From Eutreptiella sp. 'Long Island Sound 2002' (lineage: Eukaryota > Protista > Euglenida): DNA of 64,000 bases. How positions within the stretch are numbered: position 1 is the first letter of the stretch; each line of letters opens with the position of its first letter. Shown here one piece after another: positions 20,400 through 35,600 of the stretch. Below the pieces are notes generated by a model. That model saw only the letters and a program-made list of their open reading frames with translations. It was not told where the DNA came from and ran no database searches. The DNA is taken from contig OZ038379.1 of NCBI GenBank assembly GCA_964036045.1, positions 12,090,001-12,154,000 of the forward strand, read 5' to 3'. A program made the position numbers and the translations under genes.

Positions 20400-21524
20400 T
20401 GGTTCCTCCTTGGAGAGTCACATTGTTTCCTTGCCTTGGCCCATCGCATCATGTGAGTGGTCCAGAGCTTTGAACTTGGTTGTTGGGCCACCCCAGAACG
20501 GGGTTGGTTATGGGTTCTGGCGGTGTTGTTGGGATCGCCAGATTGGTGGCCTGGATCGTGATTCCTGTGTGGTCTCCCCCTTAGGCCAAATAATGGGCCT
20601 GGTAGTCCACAGGGTCACTAATTGCTCATACCATGGGAGACAGGAGGATTGCATCAAAGTTGTCTGCCATGCCGTGTCCCTACGGTCACATGATGTAGTT
20701 GGAAAGCCGGGTCGACGAGGGTGCTTGACTGTAACCGATGGTGCCACCACCACCTTGGTCCTGTTGTTTTGGGCTATACCGTGTCGGTATATTCCCCCTT
20801 GAATACCTCTATGTCACTCCATTGTCCCAACCAGTCGTCCATGACTCTCCATTTCCTGTCAGGAAATCACTACTGTCGAAGTAGGGATTTTACGACGCGT
20901 CGGGCCCCGACACCTCCCGACGCGTCGTACATCCCCGACGCGTCGGGCCCCGACACCTTGTACGACACTGTACGACGCGTCGTACATCCCCGACGCGTCG
21001 GGCCCCGACACCTTGTACGACACAGTACGACGCGTCGTACAGTGTCGTACGACGCTTGTACGACACTGTACGACACTGTACGACACTGTACGACACTGTA
21101 CGACGCGTCGTACAGTGTCGTACGACGCTGGTACGACACAGTACGACACAGTACGACACAGTACGACACAGTACGACACAGTACGACACAGTACGACACA
21201 GTACGACACAGTACGACACAGTACGACACAGTACAACACAGTACGACACTGTACGACACAGTACGACACAGTACGACACAGTACGACACAGTACGACGCG
21301 TCGTACAGTGTCGTACGACATATATATGTATATATATGTATGTATGTATACACTGTACGACACAGTACGACACAGTACGACACAGTACGACACAGTACGA
21401 CACAGTACGACACAGTACTACACTGTACGACACAGTACGACACAGTACGACACAGTACGACACAGTACGACGCGTCGTACAGTGTCGTACGACATATATA
21501 TGTATATATATGTATGTATGTATG

Positions 21525-21562
<38 letters not shown>

Positions 21563-22730
21563 TATATACACTGTAGACTAATTGTAGACACTGTCGGCAT
21601 GTTGTAGACGCGAAGTGCCAATATTTGGCTTCCCCCAAAACGGTCCGCTGCCATCGTTTACCCGCACAGAGGGGGTGGGCGGTCTGGGGTCTGTAGACAC
21701 TGTGCACCACAAGTAGACGCGGCCTGCTAATTGTAGACACTGTCGGCATGTTGTAGACGCGAAGTGCCAATATTTGGGAAGGGGGCCGAAGGCCCCCTTC
21801 CCCCAAAACGGTCCGCTGCAATCGTTTACCCGCATATAGGGGGTGGGCGGTCTGGGGTCTGTAGACACTGTGCACCACAGGTAGATGCGGCCTGCTAATT
21901 GTAGACATTGTCGGCATGTTGTAGACGCGAAGTGCCAATATTTGAGGTTTCCCCTTTTGGACTGTTTTGACCAAAATGGAAACGCATTTGGACCCATTTT
22001 GCCCCGTTCTGACCAATCTGTTTTTTTTTCCATTTACATGTGTTTATATGTCTACATATGTATATGTCTGTGTGTGACGTACCGTGTCGTACTGTGTCGT
22101 ACTGTGTCGCACTGTGTCGTACTGTGTCGTACTGTGTCGTACTGTGTCGTACTGTGTCGTACTGTGTCGTACTGTGTGGTACTGTGTCGTACTGTGTCGT
22201 ACTGTGTCGTACTGTGTCGTACTGTGTCGTACTGTGTCGTACCGTGTCGTACTGTGTCGTACAGTGTCGGTGCTGTACGACACCTTGTACGACACTGTAC
22301 GACGCGTCGTACATCCCCGACGCGTCGGGCCCCGACGCCTTGTACGACACTGTACGACGCGTCGTACGCTCCCGACGCGTCGGGCCCCGACACCTTGTAC
22401 GACGCCCCGACGCGTCGTACAGTGCATTTCCGACAGCACTCCAGGAAATGGACTATCCGTTAGTATGGTGATGCACAATGGCGCATAAGGCAGACTCCAG
22501 CAGCTATGGCCCAAGGGTTATTGGTGGGGAGTAGTTGGACGTATTTGGATATGGAGTCGTGCACCAGCATGATGACGTCGCTTGATTGGTGGGTGTGGAA
22601 ACGTGGGAAAAAGTCTCGGACTGGCCATGCTGTGAGTGCCATGTGGTTGGCTCCTCTCTGAAATCCGACTTCCTGTAGCACGATCAGTTGGGGGATTGTT
22701 GCATGATTTCCTGGAGTATGGCAGTCCACA
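20400..22730 (-). mobile_element. Degenerate LINE apurinic-endonuclease region, split by the insertion at 20868-22441
   Basis: LIVLQEVG (~22670) is upstream; D.ILLS and GGDHTGITI (~20550-20680) are downstream. Removing the insert and one TSD restores TDSPFP-DRKWRVMDDWLGQW. The element probably extends to ~24550 and ~19900, but its limits are unclear. Confidence 0.7.
20868..22441. mobile_element. Non-autonomous palindrome-built foldback element with 8-bp TSD
   Basis: TSD CAGGAAAT at 20860-20867 and 22442-22449. Imperfect termini CACTACTGTCGAA and (reverse complement) GAGTGCTGTCGGA. (GTACGACACA)n on + (~21130-21470) and inverted (~22080-22260), many GTACGACGCGTCGTAC palindromes, central ~150-170 bp units at 21578, 21727 and 21895. 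Confidence 0.85.
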
Positions 22731-32600: not shown

Positions 32601-35600
32601 ATAGCGACCACACAGGCCAGAGGGTGGTCAGGTGTGGCCACCACAGGTTGCCCCTTCCACCACCACCCTCGTTTCCTTCTGCACACCGCAGCGTGGCGTT
32701 GTCCTGCCGATCAGTGAGGAAGTTGTGGAGTGGTGGTGATGGCCTTGCAGCAGGTGTTCTGGTAAAGCCCTTCCGACTGCTCCGTACTGGGGGGGGAGGG
32801 GGGGCTGGACGCTGTAGGGGGGCGGTGTACATGCTGCGTACATGGGAAATAGACTGCGGAGGGTCTGCCACAAAGGCTCAGTAAGTGCGCCGGGTTGGCA
32901 CATCCGGGGGTGCGCACCGGTTTGGGCGTTCAGGAGGAAATCGTGTACATCGCTTGTCCCCAGCCGCTGGGGGAAAGCGCGTTTGGTGGTGAGAGTGGGG
33001 CTGAGTGTTGTACAACTGGTATCCAGTGCCATGTCTGACCGGCTGTTGTTAGTCAAAATCAGTGCTGGGGGACAGGGGGAGTTTGCCACAACGGCTGAGT
33101 AAGTGTGCCGGGGGCGAGGATGGCCATGCAGCAACCAATCCTTAGCTCCTGAAAGGCCCCCGTGACACAGACCAGATGGTCATCGCTCTTTCATTGTCCA
33201 AGAGTACTGCTGTCCAATTTGTAAGCTGTCAAGGGCCCGGCGACACCGCAATGCGCCGTGACGTCTTCACTCAACGGAACTGCCAATTGTGGTCCTACAT
33301 TTGTGCTGCAGAGAAGTGGACTGGTCAGTCAGTGGGCCCTGGAGCCCCAGCCAGGCTTGCGCTGAGTAACCTCCCAGGGTGGGGGGGTGGGGGGGTAAGG
33401 TGAGCTGAGCGAAGGGGTAGCGCGGCTCTTTGGCAGTAACCTCAGGGGGGGAGGGGGCGGACTCGTTTGCGGCCCTGGCCCACCCCAACCGACCCACCCA
33501 CCCACATCAGAAAAGTTTTCCCGAGGGAAAAAATGAAATCTATAAAAGGACCTGATGTTGTAGACCAATGTCAGGTACACAACCTCGGTATTGGCCTCTC
33601 CCTCCCTCCCTCCCCTCCGAGGACAAGTCAAGTCAAAAAAAGTCACCCGCCACCCAAAGCACCAACCCGGCTCCAGTCCCCATCTCTTGGGGGCTGGCCT
33701 TTAACGGGAGGGGGGCATGAAGAACCTCACAGAATCACTCGGGTTCAACCAGATTGTTGCGTGGCTGTGAGACAGAGTGCGACTTTGTATGGCTCCTCAA
33801 GGACAACGCATGGCTCCATCAGACACCCCCAAATGTTCCTTGGCTGGGGTCCCAATGTTGCAAGGGTTCAGTTGGGACGGATTCAGGGGGAGGGAGGAGG
33901 GGGGGTGTGCCATGAAGCCTGCACAAGTCGGTCGGTCGGTCCATCCGGGTGTATGTACGAGGTCGCCTTTTGAGGGAGTGCTGTCGGAAATGCATTGTAC
34001 GACACGTCGGGGCGTCGTACAAGGCGTCGGGGCCCGACGCGTCGGGAGCGTACGACGCGTCGTACAGTGTCGTACAAGGCGTCGGGGCCCGACGCGTCGG
34101 GGATGTACGACGCGTTGTACAGTGTCGTACAAGGTGTCGTACAGCACCAACACCGTACGACACAGTACGACATAGTACGACCGCCCTCCCCCTCTAGGCG
34201 GGTAAACGATGGCAGCGGACCGTCTTGGGGGAAGGGGGCCTTCGGCCCCCTTCCCAAATATTGGCACTTCGCGTCTACAACATGCCGACAGTGTCTACAA
34301 TTAGCAGGCCGCGTCTACCTGTGGTGCACAGTGTCTACAGACCCCAGACCGCCCTCCCCCTGTGCAGAGTGTTGCTTAATAGAAGGGGGGGGGCAGAGTG
34401 TTGTTTAAGAGAGGGGGGGGGGCAGAGTGTTGCTTAAGAGAGGGGGGGGGGCAGAGTGTTGCTTAAGACACTGTACGACGCGTCGTACAGTGTCGTACAA
34501 GGCGTCGGGGCCCGACGCGTCGGGGATGTACGACGCGTCGTACAGTGTCGTACAAGGTGTCGGGGCCCGACGCGTCGGGGATGTGCCTGCCCGGCTACCC
34601 CTAACAGCCGGGGGAAATTCATTTTACGGTGTGAGGGTGGGACCGCTGTCCCTCTACTCACAGTTACTGCTGCAGCCCCATGCCCCCCCCCCCCCCCCCA
34701 CGCCGGCGCTGGCCATGCGTCACACACTCAGTCATTCCCAAGACCGTGAAGTTCGGAGGGTGCCCACCACCACAAATGATGTGGGAAGTGCAACACAGAA
34801 AGTAATTTTACGGTGTGAGGGTGGGACCGCTGTCCCTCCGCTCACAGTTACTGCTTCAGCCCCGTGGCGTCCCGCCCACGCCGGCGCCGGCAATGCGTCA
34901 CACACTCAGTCATTCACAAGACCGTGAAGTTCGGGGGGGGGGGGGGGGGTGGCCTTCCTGATTTGAGTTTTTACGTTCAACCACAAGCCCAGGGCTCCCA
35001 GGAGATGACAGGCCTGGACTGAGTGGACGAGGGGGCTGCTGGAACACCAGCACAACCTGTCCGCAAGCAGCCACACATTGGCTGTGAATGCAACGTCTGC
35101 GTCCAGCGATAGAATGGAGTACCCACTGTTGATGGCATGGACCTTGAAAACAACAAAAGGGCGGAGGCAGGAGGCAGCCAGGCAGTGGGATGGGGAGCAT
35201 GGCAGGTCAGGGGGGGGTAGGGTGTCCCGGAATCGGTTCTGCACGCCTTTTGATGGGGAGTCCGGATGGCATCCCCCTCCATTTGGCCACAACGGACTGC
35301 GGTGAGGTGGTAAATCCAGAGACGCCGCTGGTGTTGCCTGGGTTACTCTGTGCCCGCGGCACTTACCGCACGCAAAAGGAATTCTCAAGACTTCACACAA
35401 AATTGTGGCCCCTGATCTATTGATGCAGATTTCTGCCGAGGGCGGAACGGCCGCGGTACCCCCCCCCTGTGTGACCTTCCGTCGGGTTGCGGCTTCTCTA
35501 CGGGGCCCGGGACGGTCACCCGTTCTTCCCTTCGCATGTTGCGTCGGGTGACCCCCCCGGCGCCCACAAACACACGCAACAGGGGCATCGACAGGGCACA

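What the first reader, a model, noticed from the sequence alone, without database searches (positions are those of the whole stretch)
20849..22452. 1.57-kb non-coding foldback element built from nested palindromes, inserted into a perfect 23-bp palindrome
Seen: an 8-bp TSD CAGGAAAT. The reconstructed empty site TCCATTTCCTG-T-CAGGAAATGGA is a perfect 11-bp-arm palindrome, and excision restores the host LINE reading frame. The interior has 16-bp palindromes GTACGACGCGTCGTAC, near-palindromes CGTCGGGCCCCGACG, a 10-bp array facing its own inverse ~600 bp away (potential stem of ~170 bp or more), TA/CA microsatellites, and about 2.4 copies of a 150-170 bp core. It is very CpG-dense. The termini are only weakly inverted: one begins CACTA (as in CACTA elements, which make 2-3 bp TSDs), yet the TSD is 8 bp (hAT-like). 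Inference: an unclassified non-autonomous element whose arrays are transposase-binding or cruciform-forming sites, possibly with a preference for palindromic targets; it could also yield dsRNA or small RNAs.
Basis: partly seen in the sequence, partly recalled or inferred. Interest (0 to 1): 0.75.

Follow-up and report, generated by a model that had tools for sequence, protein, structure and literature searches.

The report
Young non-coding foldback DNA transposon family
This is one copy of a young, non-coding cut-and-paste jumping element with at least 226 copies in a large protist genome; its insertion into a perfect palindrome is a one-off and not a targeting rule, so it is a new but fairly ordinary transposon family.

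Summary
The structure is real. The element spans window 20868-22441 (1574 bp) and is flanked by an exact 8-bp duplication, CAGGAAAT. It has asymmetric ends, CpG-rich palindromes, 10-bp arrays facing each other, microsatellites and a 168-bp core repeat.

It belongs to a family in this 2.28-Gb genome. One end occurs 226 times exactly. The other end occurs in two variants, 91 and 138 times. Of 23 independent complete copies that I could read, 20 have exact 8-bp duplications. Their non-array parts are 99-100% identical, while array lengths vary widely.

- **Palindromic targets:** not supported. The other 19 empty sites are no more palindromic than random flanking positions.
- **Host LINE:** not supported. 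The flank has no Pfam match and is single-copy.
- **Assembly artefact:** excluded, because the same architecture recurs at many loci.

My reading is a non-autonomous foldback-type DNA transposon moved in trans by a transposase that makes 8-bp staggered cuts. The superfamily is open: hAT-like by duplication length, Mutator/Foldback-like by architecture. Four copies of 6-8.8 kb may be autonomous, but I could not read them.

Copies cluster strongly in distal chromosome regions. Earlier scan notes describe similar foldback and CpG-palindrome elements in this genome. I found none on this family.

The parts
20848..20859 (.). Left arm (TCCATTTCCTG) and central T of the 23-bp palindromic target; the right arm is the TSD plus GGA at 22450-22452
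   Evidence: palindromy is a one-off among 20 sites
20860..20867 (.). Left copy of the 8-bp target-site duplication CAGGAAAT
20868..20892 (+). 'B' terminus (CACTACTGTCGAAGTAGGG...); positions 6-11, CTGTCG, pair with CGACAG at the other end
   Evidence: 91 exact genomic copies, control 0; pairing in the fold
20893..21056 (+). Left subterminal block: about 2.5 copies of a 55-bp unit rich in CpG palindromes
   Evidence: in direct orientation relative to the right block
21057..21490 (+). Forward 10-bp minisatellite (GTACGACACA/T), in blocks punctuated by the 16-bp palindrome, with a 174-bp higher-order duplication
   Evidence: unit number varies from 2 to 71 among copies
21491..21575 (.). TA/TG/CA microsatellite
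21559..21944 (+). 168-bp core repeat: 1.9 full copies plus a 70-bp partial copy
   Evidence: 2-6 copies in other elements at 98-100% identity
21945..22072 (.). AT-richer unique spacer
   Evidence: 99.6% mean identity among copies
22073..22269 (-). Inverse 10-bp minisatellite (TGTGTCGTAC x 19.7), partner of the forward array
22270..22422 (+). Right subterminal block: about 2.7 copies of the same 55-bp unit
22423..22441 (-). 'A' terminus (GAGTGCTGTCGGAAATGCA, read inward on the minus strand)
   Evidence: 226 exact genomic copies, control 0; flanks diverge exactly at this base in 30 of 30 loci
22442..22449 (.). Right copy of the 8-bp target-site duplication CAGGAAAT
33976..34585 (+). Second family member in the window, built like the short type: A terminus intact, other end missing (truncated), one core copy, and four copies of a 31-bp G-rich repeat not present in the first element

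Best explanation
The feature is one copy of a young, non-coding, non-autonomous class II (cut-and-paste) transposon family with a foldback-type architecture. A DDE-type transposase encoded elsewhere is inferred to recognise the ends. Each end has 5 asymmetric outer bases, then the shared CTGTCG, then subterminal 55-bp repeats full of CpG palindromes that share a CGAC/GTCG core. The transposase excises the element and reinserts it at 8-bp staggered cuts, which gives the 8-bp duplication. The two facing 10-bp arrays, the microsatellites and the 168-bp core are internal satellites. They grow and shrink by slippage or unequal exchange and probably are not needed for movement. The palindromic target at this site is coincidental. 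Shown here: the family, its termini, the 8-bp duplications, the near-identity of copies, the array variability, the lack of coding capacity and the lack of target palindromy. Inferred: trans-mobilisation, the palindromes as protein-binding sites, and the superfamily. My estimate for the superfamily is hAT-like about 0.4, Mutator/Foldback-like about 0.35, other or undescribed lineage about 0.25.
For: The 65-bp A end finds at least 495 candidate places in the genome, and 40 of 40 scored are 100% identical. Flanks diverge exactly at the terminus in 30 of 30 loci. Exact 19-mers occur as follows, all with reversed-pattern controls of 0: A 226, B 91, and the one-mismatch variant B' 138, so B plus B' roughly equals A. 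All 20 extended loci have both termini. 20 of 23 independent complete copies have exact 8-bp duplications, one has 7 bp and two have none. Non-array modules are 99.2-100% identical, while arrays vary from 2-71 and 13-73 units and the core from 2-6 copies. Of 100 listed A ends, 83 pair with a B or B' end. Sizes are 137-2571 bp for the B type and a tight mode of 672-681 bp for the B' type. Minis of 137 bp (twice) and 192 bp (twice) exist, and four long copies measure 5955, 6241, 7459 and 8817 bp. No element ORF reaches any Pfam cut-off and there is no Rfam match. The fold pairs CTGTCG at +6..+11 with CGACAG at -11..-6 and gives z = -39. Published foldback families show the same design of asymmetric outer motifs followed by tandem-repeat arms of variable length: Tm1 (PMC3169594) and Tetris (PMC4079207).
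Against: No transposase was linked to these termini. None of the scored hAT, MULE, Merlin or zf-BED hits lies in or near the four long copies or any listed terminus. Only 150 of at least 1760 hAT candidates and 150 of at least 739 MULE candidates were scored, so this does not exclude either. The termini are only 9/13 inverted and the subterminal 55-bp blocks are in direct, not inverted, orientation. That is atypical for a textbook TIR element. The copies I read were chosen as the best matches to this copy, so the 99-100% identity overstates the homogeneity of the family.
Confidence: 0.85

Rival explanations
1. It is a deletion derivative of a hAT element: hAT transposase binds short imperfect TIRs and subterminal repeats and makes 8-bp duplications.
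For: The duplication is strictly 8 bp in 20 of 21 copies that have one. The TIR is short and imperfect, with subterminal repeated motifs. The genome holds at least 1760 hAT dimerisation-domain candidates, many in long open frames such as 846 and 893 aa. An earlier scan note mentions a hAT non-autonomous family in this genome (untested).
Against: The termini do not fit the usual hAT start: B is CACTA and A is GAGTG. The duplications show neither T at position 2, A at position 7, nor a central TA; A at position 7 occurs in 4 of 20 and central TA in 1 of 20. The hAT terminal and target consensus used here comes from my own knowledge of the literature. No scored hAT hit lies near any listed terminus or in the long copies.
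Confidence: 0.4
2. It is a Mutator/Foldback-type (MULE or Phantom-like) derivative, like Drosophila FB, Tm1 and probably Tetris.
For: The architecture matches: asymmetric outer motifs, then a shared short motif, then arms of short tandem repeats of variable number, as in Tm1. Most foldback elements are assigned to Mutator (PMC4079207). The genome holds at least 739 MULE candidates with many intact open frames of about 1007 aa. Earlier scan notes describe foldback-like deleted Mutator elements in this genome (untested).
Against: Those notes and the foldback literature report mostly 9-bp duplications (Tm1 8-10, mostly 9), whereas here 8 bp is nearly invariant. No scored MULE hit lies near the termini or long copies. 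FLYWCH and DBD_Tnp_Mut gave no hits at all. The subterminal blocks are direct, not inverted.
Confidence: 0.35
3. One reading: an element whose transposase prefers palindromic (cruciform-prone) targets.
For: This copy sits in a perfect palindrome with 11-nt arms, which is rare at random positions (about 0.2%).
Against: The other 19 empty sites have best arms of 1-6 nt, mean 2.9 against a null of 3.0. With 20 sites, one such hit has roughly a 4% chance, and the case was picked post hoc.
Confidence: 0.03
4. It belongs to a transposase lineage outside the Pfam-covered superfamilies. One candidate is the RAG1/CMC-like elements with CACTA-like ends and palindrome clusters that other scan notes report in this genome. 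That would make it a new combination with 8-bp duplications.
For: One end starts with CACTAC. It has CpG-palindrome modules like those noted for several transposon families here (untested leads). The long copies, at 6-8.8 kb, resemble the 7-8 kb sizes in those notes. Pfam probes for P-element, CACTA, RAG1, KDZ/Zisupton and two hAT-associated families, the hAT-like RNase H and DUF4371, found nothing.
Against: CACTA/Mirage/Chapaev and Transib elements make 2-5-bp duplications, not 8 (my own knowledge of the literature). Only one end is CACTA-like. There is no sequence link to those elements.
Confidence: 0.2
5. It is an assembly artefact, or a plain satellite block rather than a mobile element.
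For: It is rich in tandem and inverted repeats, which assemblers handle badly.
Against: The same ordered modules with identical termini and different flanks and duplications occur at more than 20 loci.
Confidence: 0.01

Closest known systems
Tm1, Mutator/Foldback family of root-knot nematodes (PMC3169594)
   Same: Both have asymmetric short outer motifs at the two ends, then a short shared motif, then arms made of a variable number of short tandem repeats. Both have MITE-like and longer members and no target consensus.
   Different: Tm1 makes mostly 9-bp duplications (8-10) and has a known MULE-like transposase. Here the duplication is 8 bp, the transposase is unknown, and the subterminal 55-bp blocks are direct rather than inverted.
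Tetris / DAIBAM foldback elements of Drosophila virilis (PMC4079207)
   Same: Both are non-autonomous and modular, with internal tandem repeats of variable copy number inside the arms. In both, a short MITE shares the ends with a larger foldback form, and no autonomous partner has been found.
   Different: Tetris has 8-10-bp duplications, about 220-bp repeat units, very few complete copies and a heterochromatic location. Here there are at least 226 near-identical copies, 10-bp and 55-bp units, and a location in distal chromosome regions.
Drosophila Foldback (FB) and Galileo (P superfamily) elements
   Same: Both have long, internally repetitive inverted arms. The foldback shape has arisen independently in different superfamilies (PMC4079207, PMC3573991).
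   Different: By my own knowledge, FB makes 9-bp and Galileo 7-bp duplications. No P-type RNase H domain was found in this genome.
hAT non-autonomous elements / hAT MITEs
   Same: Both have 8-bp duplications, short imperfect TIRs and subterminal repeated motifs. hAT is abundant in this genome.
   Different: The terminal bases and target sites do not follow the usual hAT patterns, and no hAT partner was found.
Euglenid nonconventional introns, proposed to derive from MITEs (PMC11282704, PMC12501133)
   Same: The ends pair with each other (CTG/CAG-containing stems) and direct repeats flank the unit.
   Different: The published code needs C-D-G at +4..+6 and C-H'-G followed by 5-6 nt and a purine exon start. 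Here the pairing triplets lie at +6..+8 and -8..-6. No placement allowed by the duplication meets the code on either strand for this copy (read directly from the sequence).

Membership tests
Class II TIR-order non-autonomous transposon | Fixed-length target-site duplication flanking copies at unrelated loci | tested here: met
   20 of 23 independent copies have an exact 8-bp duplication and one has 7 bp
Class II TIR-order non-autonomous transposon | Shared precise termini, with flanks diverging at the same base | tested here: met
   30 of 30 loci; 226, 91 and 138 exact terminal 19-mers with controls of 0
Class II TIR-order non-autonomous transposon | Terminal inverted repeats | tested here: inconclusive
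   The outer 13 nt match at only 9 of 13. CTGTCG/CGACAG pair in the fold. The subterminal 55-bp blocks are direct, not inverted.
Class II TIR-order non-autonomous transposon | No transposase gene inside; an autonomous partner exists elsewhere | tested here: inconclusive
   No Pfam family reaches its cut-off in element ORFs. Four copies of 6-8.8 kb with both termini exist but could not be read.
hAT superfamily | 8-bp target-site duplication | tested here: met
hAT superfamily | Termini of the usual hAT type, and the target pattern T at position 2 / A at position 7 or a central TA | tested here: not met
   The ends are CACTA and GAGTG. A at position 7 occurs in 4 of 20 and central TA in 1 of 20. 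Positions 1-3 are biased by how copies were sampled. The consensus itself is from my own knowledge.
hAT superfamily | hAT transposase between the same termini | not testable with these tools
   Only 150 of at least 1760 candidates were scored, none near the termini. The long copies could not be fetched.
Mutator / Foldback (MULE, Phantom) | Duplication of 8-10 bp, usually 9 | tested here: inconclusive
   8 bp is nearly invariant. This is at the edge of the reported range.
Mutator / Foldback (MULE, Phantom) | Long arms of short tandem repeats in inverted orientation, with variable copy number | tested here: met
   10-bp arrays facing each other, 170-nt arms 96% complementary; 2-71 and 13-73 units among copies
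Mutator / Foldback (MULE, Phantom) | MULE-type transposase between the same termini | not testable with these tools
   150 of at least 739 candidates were scored, none near the termini. FLYWCH and DBD_Tnp_Mut gave 0 hits.
CACTA / En-Spm | CACTA at both ends and a 2-3-bp duplication | tested here: not met
   Only one end is CACTA and the duplication is 8 bp. Transposase_21 gave 0 hits.
Merlin | 8-9-bp duplication and an IS1595-type DDE transposase with the same ends | tested here: not met
   All 128 candidates were scored and none lies in the long copies or near any listed terminus. Merlin hits are mostly central on chromosomes, the reverse of this family.
Zisupton / KDZ and P superfamily | Matching transposase domain present in the genome | tested here: not met
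   KDZ gave 0 hits and TNP-like_RNaseH_N gave 0 hits. The controls also stayed silent, so absence is not proven.
Euglenid nonconventional intron | 5'-N3-CDG ... CH'G-N5-6 followed by a purine exon start | tested here: not met
   The code is from PMC12501133. I checked all 9 boundary placements allowed by the duplication on both strands of this copy (sequence), and none fits.

The most novel reading that the evidence does not exclude
The four copies of 6-8.8 kb encode a transposase lineage not covered by current family models that makes 8-bp duplications. The family-specific CpG palindromes would then be binding sites for it or for an accessory protein, making this a new superfamily-level variant in euglenids. 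A weaker form is that this family feeds the pool of hairpin-ended insertions from which euglenid nonconventional introns arise.
Probability: 0.15. Interest if true: 0.6.

Novelty: new member of a known kind. Interest (0 to 1): 0.3.

Why it matters
The genome appears to be a euglenid according to other scan notes, which I did not verify. In the published Euglena gracilis assembly, about a third of the genome is unclassified repeat (PMC11252322). This family is recently active and would be easy to trace. It has two size classes, mini derivatives and probable autonomous copies, and it is strongly enriched in distal chromosome regions. That makes it a useful marker for transposition activity, for insertion-site choice, and for how short arrays inside transposons expand. 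It does not show a new transposition principle, and the palindrome-targeting idea that made it look special does not hold.

Tried and rejected
- **Palindromic target preference.** Tested on 19 other empty sites against 1560 random flank positions and rejected.
- **Host LINE.** Flank ORFs gave no Pfam hit at E<=10 and the flank is single-copy, so I could not check the palindrome in paralogues.
- **Finding the autonomous partner.**
  - The window and 50 loci hold no extra termini.
  - The only extra sequence inside a copy (L037) is a nested, unrelated inverted-repeat MITE.
  - I probed the genome with Pfam families: hAT dimerisation, hAT-like RNase H, DUF4371, zf-BED, MULE, DBD_Tnp_Mut, FLYWCH, P-element RNase H, Transposase_21, RAG1, KDZ and IS1595/Merlin. 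None placed a hit in the four long copies or near any listed terminus.
  - For hAT, MULE and zf-BED only the best 150 candidates are scored, so these results are not exclusions.
- **Fetching the long copies.** I did not try to read genome letters by any other route.
- **Metagenome scan for the terminus.** Three chance matches with no family motifs.
- **Euglenid nonconventional-intron code.** Not met on either strand for this copy (sequence).
- **Rfam.** Nothing in the element.
- **Large protein searches.** Not used. There was no real protein to search, and with the look-up of encoding contigs closed their hits could not be turned into DNA.
- **Human sequence.** The window is not human.
Full report
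**What is there**

The direct repeat CAGGAAAT lies at 20860-20867 and 22442-22449 and brackets a 1574-bp insert, 20868-22441. Removing the insert and one repeat copy gives a perfect palindrome with 11-nt arms around a central T.

From left to right the insert consists of:
- the 'B' terminus, starting CACTACTGTCGAAG;
- about 2.5 copies of a 55-bp unit packed with CpG palindromes;
- a forward 10-bp minisatellite of about 41 units, in blocks separated by the 16-bp palindrome GTACGACGCGTCGTAC and carrying a 174-bp higher-order duplication;
- TA/CA microsatellites;
- a 168-bp core repeat (1.9 copies plus a 70-bp partial copy);
- a 128-bp AT-richer spacer;
- the inverse 10-bp minisatellite of about 20 units;
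- about 2.7 copies of the 55-bp unit again;
- the 'A' terminus, which reads GAGTGCTGTCGGAAATGCA inward.

The best inverted arms are 170 nt, 96% complementary and 782 nt apart. As a single strand the element folds to -918 kcal/mol, against -574 +/- 9 for dinucleotide shuffles (z = -39). In that fold, CTGTCG at +6..+11 pairs with CGACAG at -11..-6. CpG observed/expected is 1.49 in the element and 0.69 in the window.

The two subterminal 55-bp blocks are in direct, not inverted, orientation (alignment score 208 against 78). The exact 15-nt near-palindrome occurs only once, although its 13-nt core occurs five times.

**It is a family**

The window holds a second A terminus at 33976 (0.04 expected by chance). 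It heads a truncated copy of about 610 bp.

In the window's own assembly (2.28 Gb, 2317 contigs) the last 65 bp of the element find at least 495 candidate places. The 40 that were scored are all 100% identical. In all 30 loci returned, the flanks diverge exactly at the first base of the terminus.

Exact 19-mer counts, each with a reversed-pattern control of 0:

| Terminus | Exact copies |
|---|---|
| A | 226 |
| B | 91 |
| B' (one-base variant of B) | 138 |

B plus B' therefore roughly equals A.

All 20 loci that I extended to 10 kb have both ends. Of 23 independent complete copies, 20 have exact 8-bp duplications, one has 7 bp and two have none. One of the two without a duplication sits in a satellite. 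The other may be a recombinant.

Non-array modules are 99.2-100% identical among copies. The forward array ranges from 2 to 71 units, the inverse array from 13 to 73, and the core from 2 to 6 copies, which gives sizes of 988-2950 bp. These copies were picked as the best matches to this one, so they are the youngest layer of the family.

**Two size classes, minis and long copies**

I paired the listed terminus coordinates on the first ten chromosome-scale contigs. Of 100 A ends, 83 have a B or B' partner within 20 kb.

| Type | Pairs | Usual size | Minis | Long copies |
|---|---|---|---|---|
| B | 37 | 673-2571 bp | 137 bp, twice | 6241 and 7459 bp |
| B' | 46 | tight mode at 672-681 bp | 192 bp, twice | 5955 and 8817 bp |

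Minis of the same size recurring at different loci suggest that very little beyond the ends is needed for movement. I could not read them to check their duplications. The four long copies are the obvious candidates for autonomous elements.

**What it is not**

- **Not a palindrome-targeting element.** The other 19 reconstructed empty sites have best palindrome arms of 1-6 nt, mean 2.9. At 1560 random flank positions the mean is 3.0. Arms of 11 nt or more occur at about 0.2% of random positions.
- **Not shown to be inside a LINE.** The flank ORFs give no Pfam hit even at E<=10, the frames carry stops, and the flank is single-copy.
- **Not coding.** Element ORFs are translations of the arrays and reach no Pfam cut-off. 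No Rfam family matches.
- **Not an assembly artefact**, given the many loci with the same ordered modules.
- **Not an obvious euglenid nonconventional intron.** The published code is 5'-N3-CDG ... CH'G-N5-6 followed by a purine (PMC12501133; review PMC11282704). It is not met by any of the boundary placements that the duplication allows, on either strand. The pairing triplets sit at +6..+8 and -8..-6.

**Which transposase**

This remains open.

*For hAT.* The 8-bp duplication is nearly invariant. The TIR is short and imperfect and is followed by subterminal repeats. The genome has at least 1760 hAT dimerisation-domain candidates, some in open frames of 846-893 aa.

*Against hAT.* The terminal bases and the target sites lack the usual hAT patterns. 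That consensus comes from my own knowledge.

*For Mutator/Foldback.* The design is close to Tm1: asymmetric outer motifs, a shared short motif, then arms of short tandem repeats in variable number (PMC3169594). Most foldback elements are assigned to Mutator (PMC4079207). The genome has at least 739 MULE candidates with many intact frames of about 1007 aa.

*Against Mutator/Foldback.* Those families make mostly 9-bp duplications.

*Other superfamilies.* All 128 Merlin candidates were scored and none coincides with the family. P-element, CACTA, RAG1 and KDZ, the hAT-associated families hAT-like RNase H and DUF4371, and the Mutator-associated DBD_Tnp_Mut and FLYWCH gave no hits. zf-BED hits were elsewhere.

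None of the scored hAT or MULE hits lies in the long copies. Only 150 candidates are scored per search, so this excludes nothing.

I could not read the long copies. A metagenome scan for the terminus gave only chance matches.

**Distribution**

On the four largest contigs of known length, 45 of 51 A termini lie in the outer 17% of the chromosome at either end (binomial P about 1e-15). None lies deeper than 30% of the chromosome length from its nearest end. Merlin-domain hits, for which every candidate was scored, show the opposite pattern: 9 of 51 are distal (Fisher P = 3e-13). Whether this reflects insertion preference, GC-rich or gene-rich compartments, or differential removal is unknown.

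**Context**

Other agents' notes on this genome call it a euglenid (Euglena-like). They describe foldback-like deleted Mutator elements with 9-bp duplications, and several transposon families with their own CpG-palindrome modules. I took these as leads only. I found no note on this family.

The genome size is close to the published 2.37-Gb E. gracilis assembly, in which 32.7% of the genome is unclassified repeat (PMC11252322). That assembly has 46 chromosomes with a maximum of 121 Mb, whereas this one has pieces of up to 201 Mb. A 1577-aa uninterrupted myosin frame next to one copy fits a protist. I did not verify the species. The window is not human.

**Verdict**

This is a real, young, abundant, non-autonomous foldback-type DNA transposon family with 8-bp duplications. 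It is new as a family and ordinary in kind. The palindromic target is a coincidence. The open question is the transposase, and reading four named intervals would answer it.

Noticed in passing
window 33976-34585: A second family member in the window, built like the short type. It is truncated at the non-A end and carries four copies of a 31-bp G-rich repeat that the main element lacks.
   Followed up: partly
genome coordinates (C1, C2, C3, C5): Copies of this family are strongly concentrated in distal chromosome regions (45 of 51 in the outer 17%). Merlin-type transposase hits are mostly central (9 of 51 distal).
   Followed up: partly
L037, inside the element at 302-2602 (element positions about 710-1288): A nested, unrelated insertion of about 580 bp with long inverted arms and poly-C/poly-G tracts sits in the element's TA microsatellite.
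   Followed up: partly
L039:5270-10000 (minus strand): An uninterrupted 1577-aa open frame with a complete myosin motor domain (E = 4e-191) runs off the locus end. It is about equally distant from plant class XI, myosin X and Dictyostelium myosin II structures.
   Followed up: partly
L031/L032 flanks and L044:1-7439: Kilobase-scale short-period satellites that stay open in several frames flank these copies. L031 and L032 are the same insertion on two contigs (C945 and C24), and L027 and L028 are likewise duplicates.
   Followed up: no
L036:303-2390: A complete element without a target duplication (flanks GGATTAGC against CATATTGC), possibly a product of recombination between two copies.
   Followed up: no
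G000 C16:6.45-6.82 Mb and C2:10.45-10.60 Mb: MULE-domain hits occur in same-strand clusters. At least 14 on C16 have 338-aa frames, and copies on C2 are spaced at 2.9 kb. This suggests tandemly amplified transposase-derived genes or elements.
   Followed up: no
   Followed up: partly
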